This document shows, piece after piece, positions 1-49,400 of a stretch of 64,000 bases of DNA. The translations under genes and the position numbers were made by a program. The notes beneath the pieces were generated by a model. The model made no database searches and was not told the origin of the DNA. It saw only the letters and a list, made by a program, of their open reading frames with translations. This stretch comes from Stylophora pistillata (lineage: Eukaryota): contig NW_019217939.1 in the NCBI RefSeq assembly GCF_002571385.2, positions 1-64,000 on the forward strand, given 5' to 3'. Numbering within the stretch: the stretch's first letter is position 1; every line of letters begins with the position of its first letter.

Positions 1-248
1 GTTTTCTAAGGTTTATTATACTTGAGTTGAATTGGTTCGTACTTTCCCTTGCTGACTCCCCAATTGTAAATTTCTGCTTTAAAGACGTAACTGTTTCAGT
101 GGCCAGATAATGTCTATATTATCTCTTTTTTCTATATCGGTAAGAGCATCGAGGTATAAACGGTGATCGAGAGACTATCTTTCCTTACTATGTTTCTAGA
201 CTTCTCCACCGCAGCCGTCTTTTTTAAACTACTTCACTTGTCTTTCAG

Positions 249-515
249 TATTTCGTCAGTATCAACATCATCAAGTGCTTCAACATCGTCGTCAGCGTCA
301 ACATCATCAAGCGCTTCCACATCTTCGTCAGCATCGACATCATCAAGTGCTTCAACATCATCTTCAGTGTCGACTTCATCAAGTGTCTCAACATCGTCGT
401 CAATTTCGACTTCATCAAGCATTTCAACATCGTCGTCGGCATCAACTTCATCAAGCGCTTCAACATCATCATCAGTGTCGACATCGTCCTCTGTTTCCAC
501 ACCAACTACAACGAG
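249..515 (+). CDS. Mucin S/T-repeat exon (267 nt, phase 2-2)
   Basis: ctttcag|T ... ACGAG|gtatg; ends SVSTPTTT. Confidence 0.85.
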
Positions 516-3500
516 GTATGAATTGCATAGACTCAGCTCAATATCTATATTCAGCTCAATATCAGTATCATGTGACAATATGATATTCAAGTCTCACTTT
601 GTACCATTTCGACACAAAAGAATTACAATTAAAGTCTTGATAGTTATGCTTTTTCCCATTAGAATTTGGTTGATATCATACAACCTTTTGTTAGGTTGCA
701 AGCTTTTACTCTTGCAATAAAAAAAATTCTCCTTCGTCTTAATTGCTAAGAGATTTCTTAGACTCCTCAAACATGTACATAGTTTATTTTCGGACTTACC
801 GTATGTTAAAACTTTAGTGCTATGTTAAAGCTTTGTTGTGTACATACAGTTTGATGTGAAATTTTAATCACGTCTTTATTTCAGTGTGTCTACTTCAAGT
901 TCATCAAGTGTGTCAACCTCCTCGAGGTATATATAATGTGTTTTAAAGTTATAAATCTATAATCATATCAAAGATATAAATAATATCAAAGATATAAATC
1001 TATAATCATATTTAAAAGAGTAAATAGATAAACTAATGTGTTAGTCTTTCCGACGCATGAAATTTTTAAATTCTTTTGTAGTGTGTCGACATCGAGCTCT
1101 GCGTCAACTTCGTCAAGTGTGTCAACATCGTCAAGGTAGAAACAAACATAATGGTTTTACATTAGATCTTTAAGTTAAATGAAATTTATGGATCATGTCA
1201 ATTATTGGTCGTAAGGTTTTACATTAGATTTTTAAGTTAACTGAAATTTATATTATTCTGGATCATGTCAATTATTGGTTGTAAGAGGACTAGTTAGTTC
1301 ATTGGTTTTATTTTCATTTAATCTTTTTTCTGCAAATGATTTTTTCTTTTCGCTGTTGTTAATGGACTGTTGTAAACATTGCATTTTTTGCATTTTATAT
1401 GAAACCTTGACAACTACTTTGGTGTTTTATTTTCCAATCAGCGCATCAACCTCAAGTTCTGTGTCGACATCATCATCGGCGTCGACGTCATCTAGTGTTT
1501 CAACACCAACAACAACGACGTATGAATTAGCTCTTTTAGACCTTGTTTATGGACCTCTGTGAATTTTTTGCTGGACATAACTTAGACACTACATCTTATC
1601 ATCTAGTTTATTTACCTCTTCAAAGTTATTAATGGTGTCGTTAATACATGTGATACTATTTTGGGGTATTTAACGCGACGCGACAACGTTTTTTTCACAA
1701 CTGTTTTTAAGAATAAACATGTTTTGATTCAGACTATCTTTACCTCAATATCTGTTGATAAAGGTCGTCAATTTTTATTTTATACTTGAGCTGACTTGGT
1801 CAGTAGTTACCCTTATTGACTCCTTAATTGTAAATTTCTGCCTTGAAGACAGAAACGTTTAAGTAGCCAGATAATTTTTATGCTATCTTAAAATGTTTTG
1901 CTCCTTTTTCGTACACAGTTAAGAGGATCGAGGTGAATAATGGAGATTTAGAGACCTTGTTTGTAGACTTCGTGACGAAAAACCTTTATCCACCGGAACC
2001 GTCTTTCTTAAACTACTTTACTTGTCTTTCAGTATTTCTACATCAAGTTCTGTATCCACATCATCGTCAATCTCGACGTCGTCTAGTGTGTCAACCTCAT
2101 CAAGGTAGTTGGTTATCTCATTTTTGAAGATCAATCCGTGTGATTTCAAATACGCGCCTTTCTCATTTTACTTGGGTAGTTTCCATAAAAAAAACTTCGT
2201 TGACGCAATTGTGATCAACTGGTTTATTTGAAAGTGAAAGTAGAAATAAAGGAAATATTTCTTGTTAAGATTGTCTGAACTCTTTCATAGTATATCTGCA
2301 TCAAGTTCGGCATCAACGTCATCAAGTGCTTCAACCTCGTCTTCACGTTCAACATCATCGAGTGCTTCAACGTATTCGTCAGCATCGACGTCATCAAGTG
2401 TTTCAACGTCGTCGTCAGTGTCGACATCGTCGAGTGCTTCAACGACGTCGTCAGCATCGACGTCGTCAAGTGCTTCAACGTCGTCGTCAGTGTCCACGTC
2501 ATCAAGTATTTCAACATCTTCGTCAATTTCCACCTCATCGAGCATTTCTACATCTTCGTCGGCATCAACATCATCAAGCACTTCAACATCATCATCAGCG
2601 TCTACATCGTCATCTGTTTCGACACCAACTACCACGAGGTAAGGACTTAATCTCGTTAAGATCACAAAAGATGTGACCACTTTCTCTGAGTTCTGAAACG
2701 CATTCTGAACAGTTATTACCCCCAAACAGCTTACCTCAAATAATCCACAGCTGCTTTTTCTCATGCAGACTAAACAATTTTGATCTAAGTCTCACAGACT
2801 TTTAGTTGTGACTAGTCAAATTTGAGCCAAAGATATCATCACCCTTCATTTTCATTATAAATAAATTTTAGTAGATAGGTTAGTACAATCCGAAAGCGTT
2901 TAAATCGTGTAATTATTTTTAGCATTTTGCAAGACCACATATAAGGCATTGAAATTGAATCATTGGTTAAAAAAAAAACAATAGCAGAAAACTTAAAAAT
3001 TTGAAATGGATTGGGCCTTAAGTATCTATAAGCAGTGACAAAGAGTTGGCATTACCGATCGCACAGCAACGAGCAAAATTTAGAAAATTTCGATTAAATT
3101 TTAGTTATATATGTTGCACTTGTTTTCAAATATTCCTTTCTATTTCTCCCTACAGTGTGTCTACTTCAAGTTCGTCAAGTGTGTCTACTTCATCAAGGTA
3201 TCATAAAAATATTTCATACCCATATGCGATTTTAAAGTAAGTTATTGCTTGAGCGAAACTACAAAGCCAATCATAGAAAGTATATGAGCTCTATCTCAAA
3301 TGCCATTACACTTTTCAATTTTATTTTAGTGTTTCGACATCAAGTTCAGCATCGACATCATCAAGCGTTTCAACTTCATCAAGGTAAGGAAAGACAATGG
3401 TGTTACATTACTTCCTACGCCTTTTTAAAACGTTTTATCGTTTGTTAATAACATCGTGTTAACCTCTGCTTTCTTTTTCCTTTTATTGCTAATACCATCA

Positions 3501-6350
3501 ATATAAAACCATTGAAACACAGGTATTTTTATTGATATCATCATTTTTAGCGCGTCAACTTCAAGTTCAGTGTCAACATCTTCCTCGGCGTCGACGTCAT
3601 CGAGTGTTTCAACACCAACAACGACGAGGTAGGAATAATGCTTAAAAGACCTTGTTTCTAGACTTTGTGAGAAAGCCTAACTTTATTCCTAGATTATGTT
3701 GGGCTACTCGTAGTTCTTTGGTATTTCTTAATCATATAATTGCATCCACTTTATCGTCAATCTCAACATCTTCTGGTGAGTTAACCCCGTCAAGGTAAAT
3801 AGCCATCTAAATTTTTAAAGATCATTACGTGTGATCTCAGAATTACATCTTTACCTCTTGGTATAAGTACTTTCTTTCGGGGAACTTTTGCAAGGTTATT
3901 CGGATTAACAGATGAATTTAGATTTAAAAAGAAGAAAGGAAAGAAATCGTTTTGTTTAAGATGTATTATAATATCTCTCCTAGTGCCTCTACATCAAGTT
4001 CGGTATCAACATCATCCAGTGCTTCAACCTCGTCGTCACGGTCAACATCATCAAGTGCTTCAACTTCATCATCGGTATCGACATTCTCCAGCGTTTCTAC
4101 GTCGTCATCAGTGGCGACATCGTCAACTGCTTCAACCTCGTCGTCAGCGTCGACGTCATCAAGTGCTTCAACTTCGTCCTCAGGGTCAACATCATCAAGT
4201 GCTTCAACTTCGTCCACAGCGTCAACATCATCGAGTGCCCCAACATCGTCATCAGCGTCGACATCATCAAGTGCTTCAACTTCTTCGTCAGTGTCCACAT
4301 CATCAAGTATTTCAACATCTTCGTCAATTTCGACCTCATCGAGCATTTCAACATCGTCGTCGGCATCAACATCATCTAGCGCTTCAACATCATCATCAGC
4401 GTCTACATCGTCCTCTGTTTCGACACCAACTACCACAAGGTAAGGACTTAATGTCGTTGAGATTACTATAGATGTGACCATTAAGTCTGCGCTCTGGAAT
4501 GCATTCATAAATAGATATTATACATGAACAGCTTGTCTCACAAAATCTACACCTACCTTTCATAAATAACTTTGAACGATTTTGATCTAAGCGTGGGTTT
4601 ATGTGGTTTTGAATAGTCAGAGCTGTGCCAAAATATTATGAGCCTTTTATTCAGAGTAAATTTTAGTATATTGTATTTATTCTCCTTGAGCGTTCAAATC
4701 GACTCGTTGTCCCAAGTGTTTTACATGATCAAATGAATGACATAAATAATAAACAAAGATTAAAAACTCTGTACTCCACATGTACAAAATAGATATTTAA
4801 ATTAAAAGCAACATAAAATAGGTAAGGCTTCAAGAAGCTTGAAACAAAGACAAAGTATTGGAATTTCTGATAGCACAGCACCAAAGAAATGATTTGTAAA
4901 CTTTATCAAATATTAGTGGTGCTATTCTACATATGTTACAGTCGGTTTCTCATCTTGCTTTTTATTTCTCTCTAAAGTTTGTCTACTTCAAGTTCGTCAA
5001 GTGTGTCAACTTCATCCAGGTATCAAAAAATTTATTTGATTCACAGACGTAATTTTAAAATTAGGGTTACGGCTTGAACGAAGCTACAAAGCCAACCTGA
5101 GAAACCCTTTAAGCTGCCTTTCTAACGCCGTTACATTTTTTTGTATCATTTAGTGTTTCGACATCAAGTTCCGCGTCGACATCATCAAGTGTCTCAACTT
5201 CTTCAAGGTAATGAAAGACGATTGTGTTACAATACTTTTCATGCTTACTTGAAATGTTTTTTCCTTTTATTTGAAGTTTATTAGGAGCATCGTGCTAAGC
5301 TCTCTATTTCGTTTTCTTTTTATTGCACATACCATCAACATAAAGCAATTAAAACGCGATTTTTTTATTATCATCATTTTCAGCGCTTCAACTTCAAGTT
5401 CCGTGTCGACATCATCATCAGCGTCGACATCTTCGAGTGTTTCAACACCAACAACGACAAGGTATAAATGACATTTTAGTGACCTTTTCCTGGATCTCTA
5501 AAGGTGACAACTTTAATTTAATTCTTTTAAGGCTTAACATAATAATTACGAAAGAGATGTATTGACTTTTGTATAAAGGCCCGTGCAAACGCTCGCAACA
5601 ACACGCAACATCGTTGGGCCAACATTGCTGTCTCCTGTTGCGCGAAGTTAGCCCATGTGTGCAAAGGCTCGCAACAAGTGACAACATGTTGGGTCTTTAG
5701 ATGAGAAACTGTAGCCTGTCCAAATAAATCCAACTGGATTTGTAGTTTTCACCTAGTCCTTGGCCAGATATTTTTGCCTCTCGGCCAACTTGAGCACGCA
5801 AACTAGTAATCTTCGCCTTGATTTCTGCAACGTCAATGTCCAGAATGTCTCTCATCTCTTCGGAAGCTCTTTCGCGTTTGCTTCGCATGTGGTAATCCTT
5901 TTTGTTGACATCCTACAAGCAATCTTTTTCCCCAAGAAGATCGATCAGTTGATCGATTTCCGATTCCGTCCACCTTCTAGCTCTTCCTCCGTCTTTTCCG
6001 TCACTAGCCGCTTTCTTTTTGCTCTTGGTTGCTGTTAATTCCCCGATTAATTCCTCGTTCACGTTTTCCATATCCGACACCATGTTGATTTCTTGTTCGC
6101 ATGTATTTGTGTTTTGAAATCTCAGTGGATACGTGGCATGTAGTGCGCATGCACCGGCGCAACATTGTTGGATGTACTGTGAAAACGAACGCAACATTGT
6201 TGGACCACGCTTCGATGACCACGAAACAAGAGAAACGTTGGCACTTGTTGGCTCTGAAGTTTGACCAGTTTCAAACCTCATCCAACAACTTCCAACAAGT
6301 CGTAACAACACGCAACAACACACAACATGGTGTGCAAACGGTCGCAACAT

Positions 6351-6383
<33 letters not shown>

Positions 6384-9300
6384 ACAATGTTGCGAGCGTT
6401 TGCACGGGCCTTAAGCTTGGTATAAAAGTAGCCCCTTTGTTGTACGTGTTTTTATATTCGCCTCGTCGTAAATTTCAAAATCTGTCATTTTCAGTCTCAA
6501 CAGACACACTTTGTTACTTTCTATAACGATATGGTCAATTTGGGTTTGTCCGTAGTCACAGTCATGTGCTCCTAAAGAAAATTATTTAAGCCTCTCAGAT
6601 GTAAAGTTCCATGTAGTGATGATTTAATTATTATTCAAATGATTTTAAAAATGACCATTTATAAAATTTTTGATAAATTGTACAATACATTTCAGTATCT
6701 CTACATCAAGTTCTGCTTCGACGTCTTCGAGTGTATCAACTTCGTCGTCAGTTTCGACCTCCAGCTCTGCCTCAACATCAAGCTCTGCCTCGACATCGAG
6801 CTCCGCCTCGACATCGAGCTCTGCCTCAACATCAAGCTCAGCATCAACATCAAGCTCTGCCTCGACATCGAGCTCTGTCTCGACATCAAGCTCAGCATCG
6901 ACATCTAGCTCTGCCTCGACATCAAGTTCAGCATCGACATCTAGTTCTGCCTCGACATCAAGTTCTGTGTCGACTTCATCATCAATCTCCACCTCATCGA
7001 GTTTGTCGACCTCGTCAAGGTATCGTTATTTCTTGAGCCTGTTTTGAGTGTCCTAAAGTATTTCAATGTTTTTTTAAAAGTTTACTTTACCGTGTAAATG
7101 ATCGGGACAACATCGGGAATAAACCTTGCGGTTTAAAATGAAGCAGACCGCGATCTGGCATTTAAGAAGTTGGATGACGGGCCTTCAATTTGTCTTCAGT
7201 GAGTAATTGCAATGATCTTTTAAAGTTCTGTAACTGAATTGCAGCTGTTCAGGTGATATGCACTATGAGCACTCGTTGTAAAGATGCAAGGAGACAAGTA
7301 TAGTTATCGTTCTGTAAATAAAAACGTTCAAGAAATACTCAGCTTTTTGTTATTTGAAGTCCTTATTTTTTTTTATTTCATAAAGTAAAACGCCAACCTC
7401 AAGTTCTCGCAGTACATCATCAAGGTACGTTGTATATTTTCCACCGTTCTTACCTGAAACTTAATCAACGGTCAAAAACTCACAAACCTAAAATATCCTG
7501 ATTTACGTTTTGAAAGAAATAACATTTAACAGTTTGATGTACTTTTCTTCTTACAGCTCAAGTCTTACCTCCTCAATTTCTTCTTCAATCTCACCGACTA
7601 CATCCTCATCAGTTTCGACATCTGTCTCAAGTAGTAAGTGATTCAACGATTTTAGCAATTGTTAATCTCTATCATCATAGAGGAAATTTATTTAAAATTG
7701 TGTTTCCTATCAAATTTCTTCCCAACGCCTAAAGCCCTAATTTCGAAAAACGGTTCACTTCGATCAAGAATTAAATTTAATAGCTTTAGACTGTAAAAAC
7801 TAACTTTTGGGGGCGTTATTCTTTTTTAGCAATAACCCTTGGCGCAATGGTACTAAGCTAAATCGAATTTAATGGGTTTTTTTTACGCCTTAAAAACCCC
7901 TTTAACTACATTTGCACTTATGATTAAAAAACTGGAAAGTACCACAAACATGATGAATTTGACAAAATTAGGAAGTAATTTTCTCAAGGTGTCTAGTAAT
8001 TACATGTTTTTTGTGTATGCACGTCACAATTTGTGACGTGCCCACGTTTTTTGCAAAGTAATTCTATTTTACTTTTTCTTTCAATTCCAGGTTCAATCTG
8101 TCCAATTTGTGTATACAAAAACAGATTAAATGAAACTGAAAAGCATTACGTAAGTCGAGATTGAGGTCCATTTCTTTCTGTAACTGTTACCAAATATTTC
8201 TTGCCCTCTATAAACAGTATACTGCAGTATGCTGCATAAACCTTTTGGTAAATCAGGCGGCCATTCGATTTGAAACCGTTACAAGGCTCTGATAGACCAT
8301 CAGGCTCTCTAATACTTATCTGCTAACTTTCTGGGCCGATCACGACTGGAGTCACCCTTTCACTCTCAAGATCTGGTTGTCAATTCTCCTTCTGGCTGCC
8401 ACACTTTTCCTTTTAAACTAGTGACACGAATTTTTTGAAAGATTAAGCTAACCTCTACCTAATACGTTTCGGTATTCTTATAACCTTGTTCGCTGGATAA
8501 GTATGGAAATCAATGGGAGAAGTTACTAGTTAATTACTTCTAGGTGTTCATTTTCCTTCACGTCTCAAATTAAGCGATTTAGGAGTAGTATGTTGGGCCT
8601 GTAGAATAATAACCGAGAGGCCTCGGTCCGAGTGTCTCGGCCGAGTAAGATCTAATTAGTTATTCAGGTCACGTAGGTGTACGAGTTAACATAATCTCGA
8701 GCATGCATGTTATACATTGGTTTCTTGACAGACTGTTTTCAAGAAAAGCAGTTTACAACTGTACCGTGACTTATTCTGAAGCATTTTCTTCGTTTCATTT
8801 TAGGAGGGAGAATCCTGGAAGGATGGACCTTGTAAGACTGTTAAATGTAAAGTAGTTGCTAATGACTGCTTTGAAAACAACCAAGTTGCCCTAATAGAAG
8901 TCTACATACAGGAATGTTCTGAATGTCCTAAGGTGAGTGGAGTGCAATCCTTGCAGTGATTGAAATCGAGCGCATTTCTTTTATTTTGTCAAAACAGTTT
9001 GTAGATCAAATATTACCTGTTATAAGACTAAATACCTCGGTAGGGCTTTAATAATTGGCCGCCACGAGTCCATCACGTTGCACATAGGTGTGATCCTGGT
9101 AGCAAACAAAAGAAGTAATTATTTCTCTTTTTTAAAGGGATACCAACGACCATCATCAGAAGATCAGTGCTGTCCAAAATGCGGTTTGTATTTATTCTAT
9201 TCTTCATTCAATATATTTTCTAAAGATGGGGGGGGGGAAGGGGGGGGAAGGGGTGAAAACGACATGTTATGTTGTTATGTGCATATATTTCTCTCTTGAA

Positions 9301-9952
9301 CAGGCAACTCCCAAAAAAATCTCGAATTCAATGTTTGCCATCTTCTTTCAAACCGTCTAGTACAATACTGTTTTCAACCTAGTGAAACAATCTTGAAATA
9401 GTCTTGGCTGATTTTAATGTTGGATGGGACAATTTTTTATTGCGGTTTTGTAGGCTTGACGTTTCAAACGATAATCACACTTAGTTTACTATAATGGCTC
9501 ATATGCATGCGATATTTTTGGTTTATTTTACAGTAAAAACGGAAGAAGATGAGGAGACCTGCAAACTATACCATAACCCGATCCCGAGACACGTTACAAC
9601 CATCGACGGCTGCGTCTCGAAGGAAAAAATAAATGTCACTGAATGCCGTGGTAATTGTTACTCAAAGACTGAAGCATCAACCGTACCACCAGGTTACAAA
9701 AAATGCCACTGCTGCAAGCCAAAATCTGAATACCTAACAAAAATCAATGTCACCTGCACGAGAGGAGGTGAGGTTGAGGAGAAAGAAGCCGAGTTACTTG
9801 TCATCACGGAATGCGAATGCGGGCCACATAGATGCGAGGCAACAGCTTCACACCGCGGTGAAGAAATTCGGAACGAAGACAATGAGCTCGTGGATATGAA
9901 GAAAAAGCGCCGTCGCCGCGCCTTGTCGCGTCTCTTTGCCCTTCCTCCGTAG
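249..9952 (+). CDS. Mucin-like secreted glycoprotein, 3' part (Ser/Thr hexapeptide repeats, VWC-like domain, C-terminal cystine knot); 20 exons in window, 5' end outside window
   Basis: GT-AG exons splice in frame into ~920 codons: (S[AVI]STSS)n, then CPIC..ESWKDGPC..C..CCPKC, then a CTCK with CxGxC and CxC motifs. Stop TAG 9950-9952; AATAAA at 10022 and 10117. Confidence 0.85.
885..926 (+). CDS. Mucin 42-nt repeat exon (unit 1)
   Basis: tttcag|TGTG...TCGAG|gtat; VSTSSSSSVSTSS. Confidence 0.8.
1082..1135 (+). CDS. Mucin 54-nt repeat exon (unit 1)
   Basis: tttgtag|TGTG...TCAAG|gtag. Confidence 0.8.
1442..1519 (+). CDS. Mucin 78-nt repeat exon (unit 1)
   Basis: aatcag|CGCA...ACGAC|gtatga; ends PTTT. 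Confidence 0.75.
2033..2104 (+). CDS. Mucin 72-nt repeat exon (unit 2)
   Basis: ctttcag|TATT...TCAAG|gtagtt. Confidence 0.8.
2291..2638 (+). CDS. Mucin large repeat exon (348 nt, unit 2)
   Basis: ttcatag|TATA...ACGAG|gtaagg. Confidence 0.85.
3156..3197 (+). CDS. Mucin 42-nt repeat exon (unit 2)
   Basis: cctacag|TGTG...TCAAG|gtatc. Confidence 0.8.
3330..3383 (+). CDS. Mucin 54-nt repeat exon (unit 2)
   Basis: ttttag|TGTT...TCAAG|gtaagg. Confidence 0.8.
3551..3628 (+). CDS. Mucin 78-nt repeat exon (unit 2)
   Basis: tttttag|CGCG...ACGAG|gtagg. Confidence 0.8.
3722..3794 (+). pseudogene. Decayed copy (pseudo-exon) of the 72-nt mucin repeat exon
   Basis: Aligns by eye to 2033-2104 and its downstream intron. 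The acceptor AG reads GG, there is an in-frame TAA, and the length is 73 nt. Confidence 0.75.
3984..4439 (+). CDS. Mucin large repeat exon (456 nt, unit 3)
   Basis: ctcctag|TGCC...ACAAG|gtaagg. Confidence 0.85.
4978..5019 (+). CDS. Mucin 42-nt repeat exon (unit 3)
   Basis: ctctaaag|TTTG...CCAG|gtatc. Confidence 0.75.
5154..5207 (+). CDS. Mucin 54-nt repeat exon (unit 3)
   Basis: catttag|TGTT...TCAAG|gtaatg. Confidence 0.8.
5384..5461 (+). CDS. Mucin 78-nt repeat exon (unit 3)
   Basis: ttttcag|CGCT...ACAAG|gtata. Confidence 0.8.
5577..6411 (-). mobile_element. Non-autonomous PIF/Harbinger DNA transposon (835 bp) in a mucin intron
   Basis: Perfect 24-bp TIR AGGCCCGTGCAAACGCTCGCAACA, TAA TSD at 5574-5576 and 6412-6414, many subterminal GCAACA/CCAACA motifs, internal MADF ORF remnant. 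Confidence 0.9.
5697..6083 (-). pseudogene. MADF (Myb/SANT-like) DNA-binding ORF of the Harbinger element, with a premature stop
   Basis: WTESEIDQLIDLLGEKDCL*DVNKKDYH..KRERA..IKAKITSLRAQ..SGQG..YKSSWIY..LQFL read in one frame; TAG at 5913-5915 replaces the conserved Trp. Confidence 0.8.
6696..7019 (+). CDS. Mucin repeat exon (324 nt = 18 x 18-nt units)
   Basis: atttcag|TATC...TCAAG|gtatc. Confidence 0.85.
7386..7424 (+). CDS. Mucin 39-nt exon (KTPTSSSRSTSS)
   Basis: cataaag|TAAA...TCAAG|gtacgt, phase 2-2. Confidence 0.7.
7557..7633 (+). CDS. Mucin last S/T-rich exon (phase 2-1)
   Basis: cttacag|CTCA...AGTA|gtaagt. Confidence 0.8.
8091..8149 (+). CDS. Mucin exon, start of Cys-rich region (SICPICVYKNRLNETEKHY)
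   Basis: attccag|GT...TAC|gtaagt, phase 1-0. Confidence 0.85.
8352..8552. mobile_element. Degenerate ~200-bp MITE-like interspersed repeat
   Basis: Resembles (recalled, not searched) an abundant coral MITE that begins ttaaccctttaactcccaagatctg; termini are decayed. Confidence 0.4.
8804..8932 (+). CDS. Mucin VWC-like exon (EGESWKDGPCKTVKC...ECSECPK)
   Basis: ttttag|GAG...AAG|gtgagt, phase 0-0. Confidence 0.85.
9138..9183 (+). CDS. Mucin exon (GYQRPSSEDQCCPKC), end of VWC-like domain
   Basis: tttaaag|GGA...TGCG|gtttgt; CCPxC motif. Confidence 0.85.
9534..9952 (+). CDS. Mucin terminal exon: CTCK domain plus polybasic tail
   Basis: tttacag|TA; 11 Cys including CRGNC, CHCC and CEC; stop TAG. 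Confidence 0.9.
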
Positions 9953-36400: not shown

Positions 36401-39400
36401 TTGCCCCATAAAGAGAGTTTATTCACACGAACAAAAGGGCATTACATCTGGGATTTCACCATTGCATTCTTATGAAAAAAGAGGCAGCTCATTTCATTTG
36501 GACTTTTCTTCGGGCTGAGAGGAGGACAATTTTAATGAAATCACTTTCTGTGACTGACAGTTCACGCTTTATTGTACCTGATACGGCGAGGGAAAAATAG
36601 AAAGTTTATCCCTTGAAATCCAGAATTGGAGTAAAATGCGCGAATTGAAAGACTTGTTGAGAAAAATAAATGCATCACTACCGGTACAGGCATATGAATT
36701 GAGACACCTGCTGGTGTTTGCTTGAACTCGGTAATTTATGCAAAACTTGTCAAAATACTCTCCTACGTCATTAGTATGGCCATTAATCACATTTTAAATT
36801 ACAAGTGCGGATTTCTGCACGCTCAACTCTATACAGAGTAGTCCTAACTACGGCTTTCTCGAATACTCTCTGCAGGTGTTTACGTGTGTTAAAGTAAAAA
36901 CACCTGCGCGTTGTAAGATAGGGTCTGGGGAGAGTATAAATACTCAAATGAGATTGGGGAGAGGCGTGAAAAAATAACTCGTCTCCTAAATTTAGGTTAA
37001 TTTTAGTTACAAGAGTAGCCAGGCTAAGAAAGGTACGTGAGTGAGGGTGATTTGCGAAGTTTCTTACTTTTTTAATATTAATTCAATTGTTTTGGCTCTC
37101 ATGGAAAATTATGTGTAAAATGCCGCCAATTTTACTGAGGTAGAACGCAAATTGCTTGCTTCATTCACATCGACCATTCGAGAATAATAAAATTGAAAGC
37201 ATTCTGGCCTCTCTTCTTTCATTTAGGTTACGCAGAGTGCGAAACGAAAGACCTTACTTCTCTAACCTTGAGTCTTACAGCATCAACCTCGTTTTCAGGC
37301 ACACCTAATTCGCGCGACAAGCGCTCCTCTGCCCTTAGCGCCCATTCCAAACAGCTCTTGAGCCCGCACTCAAATTCGTGCCAGTCAATGGAAGACTTAA
37401 GCATCTCCTCTTGTCTCCTCTGAAGGCGTTCTTTCACATGGAGAAACCGCTGATCAAGGGAAATCAATTTGACTTTAGCCTTATCGACGTCTGGGGGAGG
37501 GAAAAGCCCAAGGACTTCACTTGCTCTGTCCTTGACTTCAAGGATAATAGACTCCTGGAAGTCCAAATTGTCTGATAGCATCTGTAACGATGAAGCACAA
37601 AAACGTACGAATGTCAAGTTTTAAAATGAGAGGAAGCACGAAAACCAGGTATGAATATTGACAAAAGCCATTTGTGGGTCTCTATGCTGAGTCTTCTTCT
37701 TTGGGGGGTGGGGAGATCCTAACATCATAAAGTATAAACAACCTATGCTAGAAGCTGTTTGACTAACCTCAAAGATGGGACGAAGTTCAAAACGTATGAC
37801 TAAGCTCTACGAAGGATAACGAAGGACCCCTTTTTCAAGCTAAATCGACAAACCTATCCCACACCTTCCCGACGGCGCGCCGACGTAACGGCAACTAAAG
37901 GTTACGAGACAATCCATAGCAAAATTGCAAAACAATGTATTGTATGATCCGCTAAGTCCTGCCCCCTTCGTCGTTTTCAAGGTGCGTTTCGGCAATCAAA
38001 CACTGCAAGTCGAGCCGCAACAAACTACTGAATGATGTTTTACATGATTGAGCACAATGAGCCTTGAAGAGGTCCCGCGCTTGGAACCTTGTTACTGGGG
38101 TTCGGCACGGTTCTAAAAAGATTATAGCTTGTACTAACCTGATGTGTCTCTCTTCGATCCTCCAATTCTCCATCATCAATGGACTGGAAATCCAAAGACT
38201 TCTCTATCATGGCCAAGTTGCGAAAGCACGTGTCCATATCGTTCTGGAATTCCTGCCACTTCCAAAGTGTCTCTTCAAACTCCTCCTCTTTCTCGGCCAC
38301 ATGATCTTCAAGATTTTCACATTTGGCTTTAAGCGTGGCAAGCTGTTCCCCAAGCTCCTCGCTTTCTTTCAAAGGGACGGAGTTCATCAGATGTTGACAT
38401 CTGCTATCGAGGTCTTCAAAGGAACCATGAAGATCAGAAACCTCTTTGCTGATGGTCTAAGAGAGGAAAACACATTATCTACGAATCTGTGGTATGTTTC
38501 AGAAAAACAAGAGTTCAAACGGAAAGTAACGTTGACACAGGTGTCACTTCCGTAGTTGAAAAAGCACCGTGTTATGAGTTTTGCTACGCTCTCCGGATGT
38601 TATGTGCGGCCATCCTAAGTACATCACGTATTTCTCAAATAATTCACTTTTAGCCACCTCCAAGTAAAGCATTTTCAGAGGAAGGTAAGATCCTTACAAT
38701 TTGCTCCTCAGAGAGGGATAAATAGAACATTCCAGCTCTCACCTCATAGTTCTCCCTTTGCTCTAAAACTCTCGTGGAATCATAACTGGACGCTGTAAGG
38801 TCTTCTGTTGACGCCGCCAATTCGTCCAACCTTCTGGAAACTGTCTCCATCTCGTCATTCAGAGCATTTACTGCATGACATTGCTCTGTTTCTGCTATTT
38901 TGTCATGGAGTTTTGTCTGCAATGCCTCCCATTTCTCACCTAACTCATCGACTTTATCTTGTACCTCATCTCGTCCCTGCGATCCATTAGGTTTCATCGT
39001 AGTGAGAAGTTTGGCCTTTTCTCTCACGATCTGGAGTAGGGGAGTGACATCATATAACTGTTGCCGGCATTCCTGGAGGCAACAAAGGAGTAAACAAAGG
39101 AGTAAACAAAGGAGTAAACAAAGGAGTAAACAAAGGAGTAAACAAAGGAGTAAACAAAGGAGTAAACAAAGGAGACTTGACGTCATTTTAAATCTCCCTG
39201 GAATAATCTTACACGTGTTTAGTATGCACACATTTTAAACATAGGATGTTTCGTCTCAGCAAGAGCTCGCCGCAGTTTCATTCAGACACCTTAACAGCCT
39301 CGTAAAATTGAGCTTTTAAGCCTGACAATGACAGCGATATGTCTGCAAACAGAATTGAGCCGGACCAAAAAAAAAACCGCAAGTACACTATTCTTTTCGT

Positions 39401-43400: not shown

Positions 43401-46400
43401 AACGCAATAAGGAATCGATGTCATCAGCAACTCTTTTCTTTGCAACCGACTTTCAGTCAGCAACAATAAAGCTATTTTTGAATGAAACAATTTAACCGAT
43501 ATTATATAACTAAGTCAAAAAATGGGCATTGGGAAAAAGAAAAAAAAAAAAGGGAAAAAAAGGAAACGTAGGAGAGCGCCGAAAGATATGGAACAGGATC
43601 CATTTAAAACTCAGCCAACCTGCTCGTAGGGATCACTGCAATTACCAGCAGCAATTACTTGGAAAGCAAAGAGGAATTAACGAAATGAAATACTCTATCT
43701 TAGGGTATAAAAATTCCTACGTTTTCTCAAAATCTTCTGAAACACCTGAAGAACACCAAACTTAATCGCCGAATTCGCCGTCGCTTCCTGGTTAGATTCA
43801 CAGTTGTCGCTGACTACTTCAACCCATGATCAGGCATAACATTAAAAAAATACTTCGAGCACTTCCAATATTCAAATATTTCTGTCCTGCTCAAAACGAC
43901 TTACAAAGATGTTAATTTAAGATTAGAGATGCAAATATTTCGTGACAATCTTTCAAGCTATAGCAACGACCGCCGCCGGTTTGCTCTCCATGAACAATCG
44001 TCCTCATCAAAAGCTAAATGTCAACAGGAATTTAAAAACGCGTTTACTCACCGCATTTCCCTCCACGTAAATATAATAAAAAATCTCTGGGATCATAGTC
44101 ATGGTGAAAAGACAATAAAAAATCTTTGCCTGTGGTCCATAGGGGAATACAGTCGTTTCGCCGTTTACTGGCAGTAATAAAAACATCAATCGCATGTGCT
44201 ATTGTTTGAAAACAAAGACGATGAAGCGGCGAACTTCATTTGAAATTCAAACAATGAGGTTCATTATTTTTCATGTTGAAAACTTACGCGCCCTGTCATT
44301 TCATCAGCAACAGCAATAGAAATTGCGTTAGCTTATATCGCTCGCTCATATGGTGGTTTGAGGCGCTGCGAGGCCGTGTTACAACGAGAGGAATGGGAAA
44401 AACATCTCCTCTCGCTGAGATTCTCAGCTGAATGTTTCCTTAAAAAAAAAAAAAAAAAAAGCAGCGCCTTCTCTTTTAAGTAATTTTTTTCAAAAACCTT
44501 TGAATAGACTATAATGGAAAGTGATTCTCATAAAAAAAAATTAACATGAAATCAAGACTAAACTTTGCTTTTGAAAATCACTATCAGCAGGAGTTTCAAA
44601 AACCTTGTCCATAAGCGGCTGTTCTGCAAGGTATCGCGCACAATGCCTATTGTTCTCGAGACATTTACTTGCAGTAGCGAAAAAATTATAGATCTGTAAT
44701 ATTAGCGGCGAAACGAATTCTGGAGAGTGCGCATTCCTCTTCAGAGAATATTGCTTTAGCTCATTAGCTTCTAAAGGCGAAGCTTAGAAACAGTAGCTTA
44801 GCTTAGAAAGTTATTGTTTACACTATTGTCAGAAAAAATCAAACATAACACGCGTGTGTTTCAGGCTGGAATAGCGCTCGATTTTAAAACCGTCAGTTAC
44901 ACATTCATCTCTTTTTACATCTTACTCAACAAGCACCTTACCCGTTTAGGATTCGATTTTCATCAGAAAAAATCCACCCGCACAATTACTCTATAATAAA
45001 AAATAATGGGAAATCGAAACCCCTCTATGAATTTCTCATTGTTCCTTCAGCCCTTATTCAAGAGATTTATTCATTCTGCTGAAATAAATTCTTTATAGCA
45101 AGCACCAAGACTTGATCTCATTTGATATCTACTTACCTTTAAATTTTCCAGTTTTTCTTGAGCATCCTGCAAAGATACAGGAACTTGGTGTTCAGCGGCA
45201 GATCGTTCAAATATCACCGCGGCTTCCCTGCTTTCACTTTCAAACAGTTCACAGTCTTCCGTAAAGTGCTTGCAATCATTATCAGCATTCAGCAACAGTT
45301 GCTTCAGTTCAGACATCCGCGCTTTCACCTTTGCAACTTCGTGTGCCTTAACGCTTTCTTGGAAGCTTCCGGCATATGTGAGATACTCATCAATCTTGGT
45401 AATGTGGGCAGCAAGAGCTTTCAACCGCTCTGACATCCGGTTGCTATCAAGAGTTACGCTGGTCTCGTTTTCCTCCAGCAACATTACAGCATCAGCAACT
45501 AAATTTTCCGAAGACTTAAGCCAGCCTCCCAAGGTCTGCTGCTCGGCAACCAGATTTCGTAATTCTTCGATTCGTTTAGGAATCAACTCTTTCAACCTAG
45601 TTCTCGTCTCATTCAGCAGACGAAATCGTCTTTTTATTTCTTCTTTCCTTTCTTGAGGAGTAAAACTCACCATCATATCCTCATTCCCAGTCAATGATTC
45701 ATAATCTCTTTCCCTCTCCAAAAACTCTTGATCAACTGCCTGGCATACGACGAGTTCTTCCTCAGTCTGCTCTACCTCACCATTTTTGGCGATGACGTCC
45801 AAGTCAACGGTACCGAGTTTTTCTAAAAGGTTTTTGTACAGTGTTAATAACGCTATGCACTCGTTATCAAAGTCCTTCAGTTTTTCCAGCTGGATTATTT
45901 CTTCACCAAGCTGCTGTTGTGTTGCATGTACTTCTTCCGCTAACTCTCGTAAATCTTTTTCTATCGCATTCTCACCGACGTCTTTCCGCTTAGCGCTTGC
46001 TTTAGCAATTTGGTCCGTGATGAAAGGCAACTCACAGGAATCGAGTTTCGCCAAAGCAACTCTCTTTGATGTAATTCTTTCACTTATCCAGCTTTCGCTT
46101 TCAAGATCACTTGACTCAGGGTTCTGTTGGCCTCTTACTTCCATCAACAAGTTCCTTGTGCGATCAAGATCAGTTACCAGTTTGGTATGTTGCTTGGTGC
46201 GGCTTTTAATCTCAGCATCCCTGTCTCCCAATTTTTCTTTTACATTTTTTAAATTACTAGATATCTCTTGAAGCTTCGACAGCAGCTGCTCTTTACGCTG
46301 TCCTTCCCCTTTGATCTTGTTACACCGCGCCAACAGTTCTTGAAAAAGTTTGTATTTAGTTTCCAGAATAGAACGGAATTCTGTGTTAGCAATAAGAGCG

Positions 46401-49400
46401 TTTTCTAATTCGTCCATCTGAACTACTGGTGGAATGTCTGTGTGGGTAAAAGGAGTACAAACATCCTGCACCCAGCATTGCAACTTCGCGATGTCTTGCG
46501 CAACATTTTTTACCTCGGCCTTCTCTTTCTCTAGTTCGTTTAGTTTTCCCAAGGCCTCGTCTTTAACCTCTTCCCATCTCCTAACAACAACCGTCAGCTT
46601 TCGTTTGGGATCAAGATCTTTCTGTTCATAAGCAACATTTGGAAGCTCATCGCATCGATCGGTAAGAAGATCAAGTTTGTTACGGTAGGATTTGATTCTG
46701 GAGCACAGCTCCTGCATTTTCTCCACTCGTTCCTCCACGGATCCTCTATCTTTATCGCGTGCTAAAATTGCAGCTTCGAGTTCCTGAATACCTTCTTGGC
46801 AAGTATTATAGTCTTCTTCGAAATCTTTTTTTGTCTGAGCTAAACGCTCAAGCTCGCGCAGCTTTTCTCCTACTGAAGCTTTGAGCTTTCCCCAATCTCC
46901 TTGCAGATGTCCAGCTTTTCCACTAGGGGTATTACGTCCGCTGTGATTGATGTCGTCAGATAACAGCTTCGCTTCCCTCTCCCACAAGGCTGCCATGTGA
47001 TTGTCACGTGATTCCATGTCTCCATAAAGTCTTTTGAGCTTTCCCATTTGATCTTCCAAGGTTTCCACTGTATAAGAAACATCGACAGGCACAGCCGCTT
47101 GGTAAATGGTTAGTAAACTTTCACAGCGAGCTGACTCTTTATCTAACTCAATAATATTAGTTATTCGTTCTTCTGCGCGATGGACGCTTTCTTTTGAATA
47201 TTTATCCGCCTCATTCAACGCTGTTTGAAGCTCCCAAGTCGACTTTTCTAATTGTGGCTTTTCGCTGGAATCGACCCTTGTCAAAAGCATATCACATTTC
47301 TCAACAAGGCTCTCAACATTTGTCTTCTCTGATTCAAGCTCTGAAGCCGTTTGCTTAAGCTGACCAAGGACTTCGTTTGCAGTTTGAATATCAGATCTCT
47401 CTGAATCACAGTTCTGAAGAGATTCATGCAGCGCTTTAACGCGAGCTAAACAAACTTCAACATCACCATGAATGTCTCCAACTTCGCTAATCCATGACTC
47501 AAGTTGTTCATGCATAATACGAGCATGTGTACTAATGTTCTGCCATTCACCCTTAACTTCCTTCAACTTGTCTTGCAACGACCCCCTCAGTTCATCACAC
47601 TTGCCTGTCACATGATTACCTTCCTCTTCTAATAAACGAATCTGCTCTTCAAGTTCCTGGCATTTCTCAACTTGCTGTCTCTGTTTTTCAAGCTGGACGT
47701 TTGAGTTGTCTTTATCCGCTGAATATTGACCACCATCTACAGAATAGTTCTTTAATTCGTCTAAAGCTGCCTTGCAACGTTCTAAGCAAACGTTGTAATT
47801 GTCTTTCGCTTGAAGAAATGCCAGTAAGGTGTCTTCCTTATCAACTGCATCTCCTCTAAGTATTTCCCATTTCTTTTTAAGGGAATCAAGTTTTCCCTGA
47901 AGATTGCCGTCATCTTTCTCTTCAACAACATCCAAACCTCTGTTTTTCTCTTCCATCGAGATCAATACATCATAATATGATTCAATTTTGGGCAGCAACT
48001 CTTTTAGCTCAGCATACTGCTTTTCCGCCCTTGAATCATCCAAAGAGTACATAATAGCAGAATCAACAATTTCAGCGGCATTGTTTAACCATTCTAGCGA
48101 TTCCTCTAACTGTCTTTTGCTTTCCGTGTATTCGTTGATCTTCACCTCTGTTTCCTTCAGAAGCTGGGGGAGTTCTTTATCAAGATCTTCAAAATTCTCA
48201 CTTGCTTTTACCAGCCTGTCTTGAACTCCGCTATGTGCAACAAGGTCTTTATTCCTCTCAAGAAAACTGCGAAACTCCTCTTGTTTATCATCCATACCAG
48301 TTTGCAAATAACGCAACTCATTAAGATGTTCAGCCAAAATGTTCCAGCTCACTGGACACTGTAAAGGCTTCTGGAAGACGTCATTTGCTTGGTGCAACCA
48401 GTTTTCATAATGTGTTACTTCGTCTTGAAATTCCTCTGCTTCTCTGAGATGCTGCTCCAATTCCACGCACTTGGCGGCCGACTCATCCTGTAATCCCATC
48501 AAAGTGTCGCACAAACTGTTAAGTTCTTGTGAGAGCGAATCTTCTATCGCAGTTGAAACTTTCCCAATGCCTTGACCAACCTTTTCTTTGGCTTGCATAA
48601 TACCATCTAGCACTGTGGTCGACTCATTATTTAGATTTTGGCATTCGAAAAGCTCTTCTTCAAGCTGCGGTATGTTTCCAAGCTCGAAAACTTCTTCGTT
48701 ATTAGCTATCAATTCCTTTTTCTGCGACAACCACTCTTTACACGAAGATATTTGCTCTGTAACGTCACTAACATCATTTACGCAGTGTTCCACATCTCCG
48801 AGCTTTGCCGACAAACGCTTGTGCATTTCTTCGAATTTGGCTTCCAACGAACTAAGTCGACCTTCTTGTTCTGACTTAAACCCCTCGTTTGTTTCAAGTG
48901 GTGAATTTTCTACTTTACTTCGTAACCTTTCCATTATTTGTTCATAAGAGGCGCATTCATTGCTCAAACTTTTGAGTCTCTCAACCTGTCCAACGACCTC
49001 TTCCATTCCTTGAGAATGGTCGGACACAGAAGATATTTCCTTTTCGACATTATCTACCCAACTAATGACTTCTTCGCAGCTGTCATTTAGTTCTTTCTCT
49101 AAAGCAATTCGACGTTCTGTATCCGCTATCTTATCCGAGAAGCGAGCGAGCAACATTTTCCATTTATCTACAACTTCTGAGTAACCATCCGTGGCATCTT
49201 TTGATGTCGAAGTTTGATCTTTCTTCTCGCTAAGGCGAAAAACCAAGGATCTTTGAGACAAAGCATCTTCGAACTTCTTCTTCAAGTCTTCGACGTAAGC
49301 TTCCATTTCCTCTATGTCAGTAAAACATGGCGTCTCAGACAACACGGTGTTTTCAATTTCCTGCAAGATATCCCTGCACTGTCTCAACTCAGCTTCAAAT

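What the first reader, a model, noticed from the sequence alone, without database searches (positions are those of the whole stretch)
249..7424. Mucin glycodomain built from a tandemly repeated cassette of frame-neutral exons: a possible splice-tunable mucin
Seen: the S/T domain is split over 15 phase 2-2 exons (267,42,54,78 | 72,348,42,54,78 | dead,456,42,54,78 | 324,39 nt). Every length is a multiple of 3, and the introns fall almost always inside an AG|Y serine codon. The 42/54/78-nt trio recurs three times at ~1.8-2.3 kb spacing with recognisably homologous introns. Established: in vertebrate gel-forming mucins (MUC2, MUC5AC, MUC5B) the PTS region sits mainly in one large central exon and varies as a VNTR. 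Inference: any subset of these exons could be skipped in frame, so glycan-brush length could be set by combinatorial splicing and by whole-cassette copy number.
Basis: partly seen in the sequence, partly recalled or inferred. Interest (0 to 1): 0.75.

Follow-up and report, generated by a model that had tools for sequence, protein, structure and literature searches.

The report
Coral mucin-like gene with many-exon serine domain
This is the expressed 3' half of a coral mucin-like gene whose serine-rich sugar-carrying region is cut into many small in-frame exons made by duplicating a block of exons, but the RNA reads show the exons being joined one after the other rather than mixed and matched.

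Summary
All 15 exons have AG/GT borders, lengths divisible by 3 and the same intron phase. The 42/54/78-nt trio occurs three times in the window and once more on contig C113. The + strand gene ends in a VWC-like module and a cystine knot (PF00007). The window is the start of its contig. C113 holds three VWD domains, with C8 and TIL matches (two VWD-C8 pairs, one TIL), followed by the same serine exons, and is probably the missing 5' half.

Stranded RNA reads show + strand transcription and empty introns. Of the 12 expected neighbour-to-neighbour splice joints in 1-6000, 10 are among the 15 joints shown, and the "dead" exon is bypassed. No clear exon-skipping joint was shown; 8 weaker joints were not shown.

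The reads do indicate further cassette copies that are not assembled, and a 72-nt shorter large exon in another individual. Length therefore seems to be set in the DNA (repeat slippage, cassette duplication, exon death), not by splicing.

Multi-exon mucin domains, and the idea of setting their length by splicing, are already published for chicken Muc13 and MUC2. This is a new member of a known kind, of moderate interest.

The parts
249..515 (+). Ser/Thr exon, 267 nt, phase 2-2 (cassette 1 large exon; its head resembles the 72-nt exon type, its tail the large exon type)
   Evidence: joint 515>885 in RNA
885..1519 (+). cassette 1 trio: exons 885-926 (42), 1082-1135 (54), 1442-1519 (78)
   Evidence: joints 926>1082, 1135>1442, 1519>2033
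2033..2638 (+). cassette 2 exons 2033-2104 (72) and 2291-2638 (348; 36-nt tandem repeat, 8.1 copies)
   Evidence: depth in RNA; joints 2104>2291 and 2638>3156 are not among the 15 shown
3156..3628 (+). cassette 2 trio: 3156-3197 (42), 3330-3383 (54), 3551-3628 (78)
   Evidence: joints 3197>3330, 3383>3551
3740..3795 (+). dead copy of the 72-nt exon type (donor kept, acceptor lost); coordinates approximate
   Evidence: sequence; RNA joint 3628>3984 passes over it
3984..4439 (+). cassette 3 large exon, 456 nt (36-nt repeat, 11.2 copies)
4978..5461 (+). cassette 3 trio: 4978-5019 (42), 5154-5207 (54), 5384-5461 (78)
   Evidence: joints 4439>4978, 5019>5154, 5207>5384
6696..7019 (+). Ser/Thr exon, 324 nt (18-nt repeat, 12.5 copies)
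   Evidence: no reads were laid here (outside the 6000 letters)
7386..7424 (+). Ser/Thr exon, 39 nt, phase 2-2
   Evidence: no reads laid here
7557..7633 (+). last Ser/Thr exon, 77 nt, phase 2 to 1 (not frame-neutral); model only
8091..9183 (+). VWC-like Cys-rich module in three exons: 8091-8149, 8804-8932, 9138-9183
   Evidence: collinear with residues 1-18, 19-59 and 61-75 of the uninterrupted homologue P0007; no Pfam VWC hit
9534..9952 (+). last exon: C-terminal cystine knot, polybasic site, conserved tail and stop
   Evidence: PF00007 29.2 bits, cut-off 24; homologues P0001-P0010
5576..6412 (.). MITE-like insert with 25-nt perfect terminal inverted repeats, inside the 1234-nt intron

Best explanation
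Window 1-9952 (+) is the 3' half of an expressed coral gene of the gel-forming-mucin type. It has a long Ser/Thr hexapeptide domain (STSSS[A/V/I]), then a VWC-like module, a C-terminal cystine knot and a short conserved tail. The Ser/Thr domain is encoded by many small exons. All of them are interrupted after the AG of an AGY serine codon (phase 2). Duplication, deletion or death of any exon, or of the whole 1.8-2.3 kb block ([72]-[large]-42-54-78), therefore keeps the frame and leaves Ser or Thr at the joint. The domain grew in two ways: slippage of the 18/36-nt repeat inside the large exons, and tandem duplication of the exon block. The exons are spliced constitutively, neighbour to neighbour. 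Domain length is set in the genome (repeat number, cassette number), not by regulated exon choice. Shown: the exon structure, duplication, transcription and strand, neighbour joints, the cystine knot. Inferred: identity with the C113 5' half, O-glycosylation, mucus function.
For: Exon structure and frame. Tandem repeats inside the large exons. Cassette homology including introns. RNA: reads lie with the first mate on the minus strand and the joints read GT..AG on +. Intron bins have depth 0 in both raw-read runs. 10 of 12 expected neighbour joints are listed, with 4-21 reads (X21) and 9-34 reads (X24). The dead exon is bypassed. A contig of another individual has the large exon 72 nt shorter (2104>2382 with 19 other letters between). 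The 'goes back' joints 1517>247 (X24 9 reads, X2 contig depth 70 in a polyA library) and 5016>3328 (X21 11 reads, X24 7 reads) indicate further near-identical cassettes that are not assembled. Cystine knot. On C113 + strand: three VWD domains, C8 and TIL, then 10 of 10 Ser/Thr exons with the same AG|Y...AG|gt form, the last four measuring 144/42/54/78 nt. Only C113 and C156 hold the cassette in the assembly. C113 has no close cystine knot downstream.
Against: Read depth per joint was modest, and 8 weaker joints were not shown, so low-level skipping cannot be ruled out. One RNA contig (X2, 3197>3988 with 4 other letters, depth 19.6 against 160 for 3197>3330) could be a skip of the 54- and 78-nt exons, though it also fits an unassembled cassette. 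No reads were laid on 6001-9952. The link C113-C156 is inferred: C113 runs on for 385 kb after the homology stops at 322,336 next to transposon-like ORFs. Proline is only 8 of 661 residues, which is unlike classic PTS. No Pfam VWC hit. Glycosylation is untested.
Confidence: 0.72

Rival explanations
1. Splice-tunable mucin. The frame-neutral exons are included or skipped in regulated combinations, so one gene makes glycan brushes of many lengths.
For: All 120 donor-acceptor pairings are in frame and give Ser or Thr. One RNA contig joins 3197 to 3988, which would skip two exons (table 5c). Chicken MUC2 has one characterised in-frame splice variant inside its PTS (PMC3549977, passages).
Against: The 15 best-supported joints in four RNA data sets contain no clear skip. 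Each small exon's neighbour joints carry 4-34 reads per run. The odd joints are better explained by extra cassette copies, because the same variant letters also occur behind a normal 78-nt exon (3628>3988, X24 11 reads). Introns are short (132-538 nt; one of 1234 nt holds a MITE), which by general knowledge goes with constitutive intron-defined splicing.
Confidence: 0.12
2. The Ser-rich domain is not a mucus glycodomain. It is a phosphoserine-rich or otherwise modified matrix domain (for example in skeleton organic matrix or an adhesive), carried on a mucin-type VWD/CTCK scaffold.
For: 62% Ser with only 1.2% Pro is unlike typical PTS domains. Mucin-like and VWD proteins are reported in coral skeleton proteomes; I saw only the search listings of PMC4890752 and PMC7853314 and did not read them.
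Against: There are no acidic residues in the repeat (D and E are 0 of 661). The architecture is that of gel-forming mucins. No data on tissue or modification were available.
Confidence: 0.1
3. C156 and C113 carry two different paralogous genes, and the window gene has its own unassembled 5' half.
For: C113 does not end at the break but continues for 385 kb. The C113 cassette exons are only 78-93% identical to those of the window. The mucin locus on C113 is already a tandem pair of paralogues.
Against: The C113 gene has no 3' end and the C156 gene has no 5' end. The cassette occurs nowhere else in the assembly. Cassette introns are 65-78% alike between the two contigs.
Confidence: 0.25

Closest known systems
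Chicken Muc13 (Lang, Hansson, Samuelsson 2006, BMC Genomics 7:197; PMC1552070, abstract and passages read)
   Same: [quoted passage not shown] The authors already raise length control by alternative splicing.
   Different: It is a transmembrane SEA mucin with 20-aa repeats, one repeat per exon. The coral gene is of the gel-forming type, and a five-exon block is the duplicated unit.
Chicken MUC2 (PMC3549977, passages read)
   Same: It is a gel-forming mucin (VWD...PTS...cystine knot). Its PTS repeats span many exons (32-45) as segmental duplications, and one in-frame splice variant inside the PTS is known.
   Different: It has 69-aa Pro-rich repeats with CysD domains between them. A uniform AG|Y phase-2 rule and a fixed 42/54/78 trio are not described in the passages I read.
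Mammalian MUC2/MUC5AC/MUC5B/MUC6 central-exon VNTRs (PMC6269512, search listing and start of abstract only)
   Same: The large exons here (267-456 nt) also vary by tandem-repeat number.
   Different: In those genes the whole PTS sits in one very large exon.
Titin PEVK exons, the MUC16 five-exon SEA repeat unit, the spider Flag silk gene (recalled, from no call)
   Same: Tandemly duplicated blocks of symmetric-phase exons that encode a repetitive, extensible or brush-like region.
   Different: These are unrelated proteins. For titin, differential splicing is documented; here it was looked for and not seen.

Membership tests
gel-forming mucin (VWD-C8-TIL x3, PTS, C-terminal cystine knot) | C-terminal cystine knot | tested here: met
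   PF00007 29.2 bits (cut-off 24) and DAN 24.8 bits (cut-off 22) on the last exon
gel-forming mucin (VWD-C8-TIL x3, PTS, C-terminal cystine knot) | three N-terminal VWD-C8-TIL assemblies in the same protein | tested here: inconclusive
   They are not in the window, which starts the contig. Three VWD domains, C8 and TIL lie on C113 in front of the same Ser/Thr exons. The link to the window is inferred.
gel-forming mucin (VWD-C8-TIL x3, PTS, C-terminal cystine knot) | long central Pro/Thr/Ser tandem-repeat domain | tested here: met
   S+T are 540 of 661 inner residues, with 18/36-nt tandem repeats. Pro is only 8 of 661, so the domain is Ser-rich rather than classic PTS.
gel-forming mucin (VWD-C8-TIL x3, PTS, C-terminal cystine knot) | VWC domain(s) before the knot | tested here: inconclusive
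   No Pfam VWC hit for the 43-aa exon or for the uninterrupted homologue P0007. The Cys spacing looks VWC-like only by recall. The three exons are collinear with P0007.
gel-forming mucin (VWD-C8-TIL x3, PTS, C-terminal cystine knot) | dense O-glycosylation and secretion into mucus | not testable with these tools
   No glycan, protein or tissue data were available.
mucins with a multi-exon PTS domain (chicken Muc13 / MUC2 type) | repeat domain split over several exons that are copies of one another | tested here: met
   15 exons in the window and 10 more on C113. The 42/54/78 trio occurs 4 times with exact lengths.
splice-tuned modular repeat proteins (titin PEVK type) | symmetric-phase exons that can be skipped in frame | tested here: met
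   15 of 15 exons are phase 2-2. 120 of 120 pairings give Ser or Thr.
splice-tuned modular repeat proteins (titin PEVK type) | exons actually used in different combinations in RNA | tested here: not met
   the listed joints are neighbour-to-neighbour (10 of 12 expected), plus joints explained by extra copies. No clear skip was seen. 8 weaker joints were not shown, depth was 4-34 reads per joint, and the tissues are unknown.

The most novel reading that the evidence does not exclude
The uniform AG|Y phase-2 design is not only a by-product of duplication. Coral colonies may differ in cassette number, or under stress or in particular cell types they may skip subsets of the 42/54/78/72-nt exons. 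Mucus polymer brush length would then be adjustable within one gene. That would be a first worked example of the idea raised for chicken Muc13, in an early-branching animal whose mucus matters for reef ecology.
Probability: 0.12. Interest if true: 0.6.

Novelty: new member of a known kind. Interest (0 to 1): 0.3.

Why it matters
Coral mucus is a main interface with microbes and a carbon export route. Its mucin genes are poorly assembled precisely because of repeats like these. This locus shows how a mucin-type domain can grow and shrink safely: every exon border sits in the same codon position of a serine codon, so duplication, loss or death of exons never breaks the frame. It also flags an assembly break inside the gene (contig start at C156:1, homology stop at C113:322,336) and gives the exon model needed to test cassette number and isoforms with long reads. 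The concept itself (multi-exon mucin domain, possible splice control) has been in print since 2006.

Tried and rejected
Minus-strand reading. The antisense ORFs encode Asp/Glu-rich repeats, which recalls coral acid-rich proteins. I rejected this because the RNA joints read GT..AG on the + strand and read direction is uniform.

Circular RNA as the source of the 'goes back' joint 1517>247. This is unlikely: a polyA-library contig carries it at depth 70, similar to the linear joints at 73-87.

Assembly artefact for the three cassettes. Rejected: they differ by 7-22% in exons and more in introns, and each has its own RNA joints.

Orthologous loci in other corals could not be obtained.
- The metagenome scan gave one locus, L018, which is a 66% G+C bacterial-looking contig and a chance match. 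I dropped it.
- The word search gave 3 hits and the full HMMER search gave 21 hits, mostly short unspliced ORF calls. No full-length model or isoform list was obtained.

Intron 2105-2290 as a former coding repeat: no similarity to the repeats, not pursued.

Earlier notes of the scan by words (mucin, VWD and so on) found nothing.

Literature searches found no paper on the exon structure of coral mucins. Supplements were closed and may hold gene models I could not see. PMC2042186 (Lang 2007) is not held and is known to me only from reference lists.

The joined spliced protein was not sent to any search, family scan or fold. Exons were searched one by one.
Full report
WHERE AND WHAT.
The window is G000:C156:1-64000, which is the very start of a contig in a 398-Mb, 5513-contig assembly. 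Public RNA runs that hold the stretch are labelled 'coral metagenome' or a coded organism A, so the source is a coral.

THE OBSERVATION.
I re-derived the exon borders by script. There are fifteen + strand exons:
- 249-515 (267 nt)
- 885-926 (42)
- 1082-1135 (54)
- 1442-1519 (78)
- 2033-2104 (72)
- 2291-2638 (348)
- 3156-3197 (42)
- 3330-3383 (54)
- 3551-3628 (78)
- 3984-4439 (456)
- 4978-5019 (42)
- 5154-5207 (54)
- 5384-5461 (78)
- 6696-7019 (324)
- 7386-7424 (39)

All 15 of 15 are flanked by AG and GT, all 15 are multiples of three, and all 15 are open when the first base completes a split codon (phase 2-2). 14 of 15 donors end in AG; the one at 1519 ends in AC.

The inner codons (661) are S 409, T 131, A 52, V 38, I 14, P 8 and six others. 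This is a hexapeptide STSSS[A/V/I], with STPTTT closing each large and each 78-nt exon. All 120 possible donor-acceptor pairings give AGT/AGC Ser (108) or ACT/ACC Thr (12). The 'frame-neutral' property is therefore literally true.

Tandem Repeats Finder sees 36-nt (and 18-, 72- and 108-nt) periodicity inside the large exons: 6.5, 8.1 and 11.2 copies of 36 nt, and 12.5 copies of 18 nt in the 324-nt exon.

THE CASSETTE.
Self-comparison aligns 2316-3631 with 4117-5464 at 74% over 1369 nt, exons and introns together. It aligns 1929-2624 with 3625-4317 at 72%.

Measured intron by intron, cassettes 2 and 3 are 0.71-0.78 alike against 0.52-0.56 for shuffles. Cassette 1 introns are at shuffle level. 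The exception is the leading intron: 16-248 vs 1780-2032 is 71%.

The 267-nt exon has the head of the 72-nt exon type and the tail of the large exon type. Cassette 1 therefore lacks the 186-nt intron that cassette 2 has. Cassette 3 keeps a dead copy of the 72-nt exon near 3740-3795, with a donor but no acceptor.

The exons are copies of each other, so the uniform phase is inherited, not 15 independent coincidences.

THE REST OF THE GENE.
Downstream of the finding lies a 77-nt Ser/Thr exon (7557-7633, phase 2 to 1, so not skippable in frame). Three Cys-rich exons follow (8091-8149, 8804-8932, 9138-9183), then a last exon 9534-9952.

The last exon scores as a cystine knot: PF00007 29.2 bits against a cut-off of 24, and DAN 24.8 against 22. 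The three Cys-rich exons align in order with residues 1-18, 19-59 and 61-75 of P0007. P0007 is a 219-aa homologue with an uninterrupted reading frame whose cystine knot follows. This supports the exon model.

Pfam VWC was not reached, either by the 43-aa exon or by P0007. 'VWC-like' therefore rests on Cys spacing, which I recall rather than tested.

THE MISSING 5' HALF.
The cassette occurs in only one other place in the assembly, contig C113 near 321-322 kb. On the + strand of C113 I found:
- Three VWD domains: 303,080-304,996; 308,472-308,930; 312,606-313,667.
- C8 and TIL matches.
- A Cys-rich exon that runs into serines and ends in a phase-2 AG|gt donor.
- Ten Ser/Thr exons, 10 of 10 with the same AG|Y...AG|gt form by my reading of the printed flanks.

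The last four of these exons measure 144/42/54/78 nt. Their introns are 65-77% like those of window cassettes 2 and 3.

Homology stops at C113:322,336, next to transposon-like ORFs on the other strand. C113 has no close cystine knot downstream. Its only match, at 268.8 kb, ends an upstream paralogue. That paralogue has long Ser/Thr open stretches, up to 345 aa and nearly continuous from 257.6 to 261.5 kb. Fragmentation into small exons is therefore particular to this gene.

The simplest reading is one gene broken by the assembly. I give this about 0.7.

RNA.
The single read-laying run covered window 1-6000, with two raw-read runs (X21, X24) and two sets of RNA contigs (X1, X2) from four studies.

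- Direction and depth. Reads lie almost only with the first mate on the minus strand, and the joints read GT..AG on +, so the + strand is transcribed. Intron bins (601-800, 1601-2000, 2801-3000, 4601-4800) have depth 0 in both raw runs.
- Neighbour joints. Of the 12 expected neighbour joints, 10 are among the 15 shown, with 4-21 reads in X21 and 9-34 in X24: 515>885, 926>1082, 1135>1442, 1519>2033, 3197>3330, 3383>3551, 3628>3984, 4439>4978, 5019>5154, 5207>5384. The joint 3628>3984 passes over the dead exon.
- Missing joints. The two not shown (2104>2291, 2638>3156) flank the 348-nt exon. Most reads there carry other letters, so the sampled individuals differ from the assembly at that point. 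Eight weaker joints were not displayed.
- Skipping. No clear exon-skipping joint is listed. The one candidate is an X2 contig joining 3197 to 3988 with four other letters (depth 19.6 against 160). It carries the same variant start that in X24 follows a normal 78-nt exon (3628>3988, 11 reads). It therefore fits an unassembled cassette at least as well as a skip.

WHAT THE RNA DOES SHOW ABOUT LENGTH.
- Extra cassettes. 'Goes back' joints 1517>247 (X24 9 reads, X21 1 read, X2 polyA contig depth 70) and 5016>3328 (X21 11 reads, X24 7 reads) occur. Variant letters are also present in about two thirds of reads over the 54- and 78-nt exons (table 3). Together these say that transcripts contain further cassettes nearly identical to those assembled. 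This fits a contig that breaks inside the array. The C113 copy is too different (78-93%) to be their source.
- Shorter large exon. An X2 contig joins the 72-nt exon to a large exon that is 72 nt shorter (2104>2382, with 19 letters between). This is repeat-number variation between individuals.
- Exon death. Cassette 3 shows that losing an exon is tolerated.

Length thus varies, but at the DNA level.

COMPARISON WITH WHAT IS KNOWN.
Gel-forming-mucin-type proteins are known in Cnidaria (PMC4948705, passages; PMC9080433, passages). The passages I read in those papers say nothing on exon structure.

[quoted passage not shown] Chicken MUC2 is a gel-forming mucin with PTS repeats spanning exons 32-45 as segmental duplications. 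It has one in-frame splice variant that removes 165 aa (PMC3549977, passages).

Four literature searches found nothing on coral mucin exon cassettes. Supplements were closed. Titin PEVK, MUC16 and Flag silk as analogues are recalled, not checked.

VERDICT.
The mucin-like identity is supported, and the cassette duplication is confirmed. Splice tuning was looked for and not seen, though rare or conditional skipping is not excluded (about 0.12). This is a new member of a known kind, with interest 0.3. It is a tidy example of how uniform intron phase lets a repeat domain evolve by exon-block duplication, and a pointer to an assembly break. It is not a new mechanism.

Noticed in passing
window 9836-9952; proteins P0002-P0010: The tail after the cystine knot (polybasic run followed by ALSRLFALPP and stop) is nearly identical in about nine homologues that are otherwise only 40-54% identical. 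This suggests a conserved processing or sorting signal.
   Followed up: partly
window 5576-6412: An 837-nt MITE-like element with 25-nt perfect terminal inverted repeats sits inside the 1234-nt intron. A few RNA reads of the opposite direction lie on it.
   Followed up: partly
window about 14,000-64,000, minus strand: A giant spectrin-repeat (nesprin-like) gene lies tail to tail with the mucin-like gene. It includes one 2380-aa open frame at 45071-52213.
   Followed up: no
G000:C113:235,000-269,200 (loci L019, L020): An upstream tandem paralogue has VWD domains at 235-240 kb, long Ser/Thr open stretches (up to 345 aa, and near-continuous 257.6-261.5 kb with N runs), and a weak cystine-knot match at 268,811-269,146. 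The locus is a tandem mucin pair with contrasting exon sizes.
   Followed up: partly
G000:C113:318,932-319,879 and 322,470-323,500 (loci L012, L013): A reverse-transcriptase-like 316-aa open frame sits inside an intron of the C113 Ser/Thr region. Integrase/transposase-like ORFs lie on the other strand exactly where cassette homology ends.
   Followed up: no
window 39081-39174: A perfect 12-nt tandem repeat (7.8 copies, 100% matches) in the nesprin-like gene region reads as a Leu/Cys-rich run on the minus strand.
   Followed up: no
window 234-7036, minus strand: The antisense of the Ser/Thr exons is open and would encode Asp/Glu/Val-rich repeats. RNA direction and splice sites show that it is not the transcribed strand.
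   Followed up: yes
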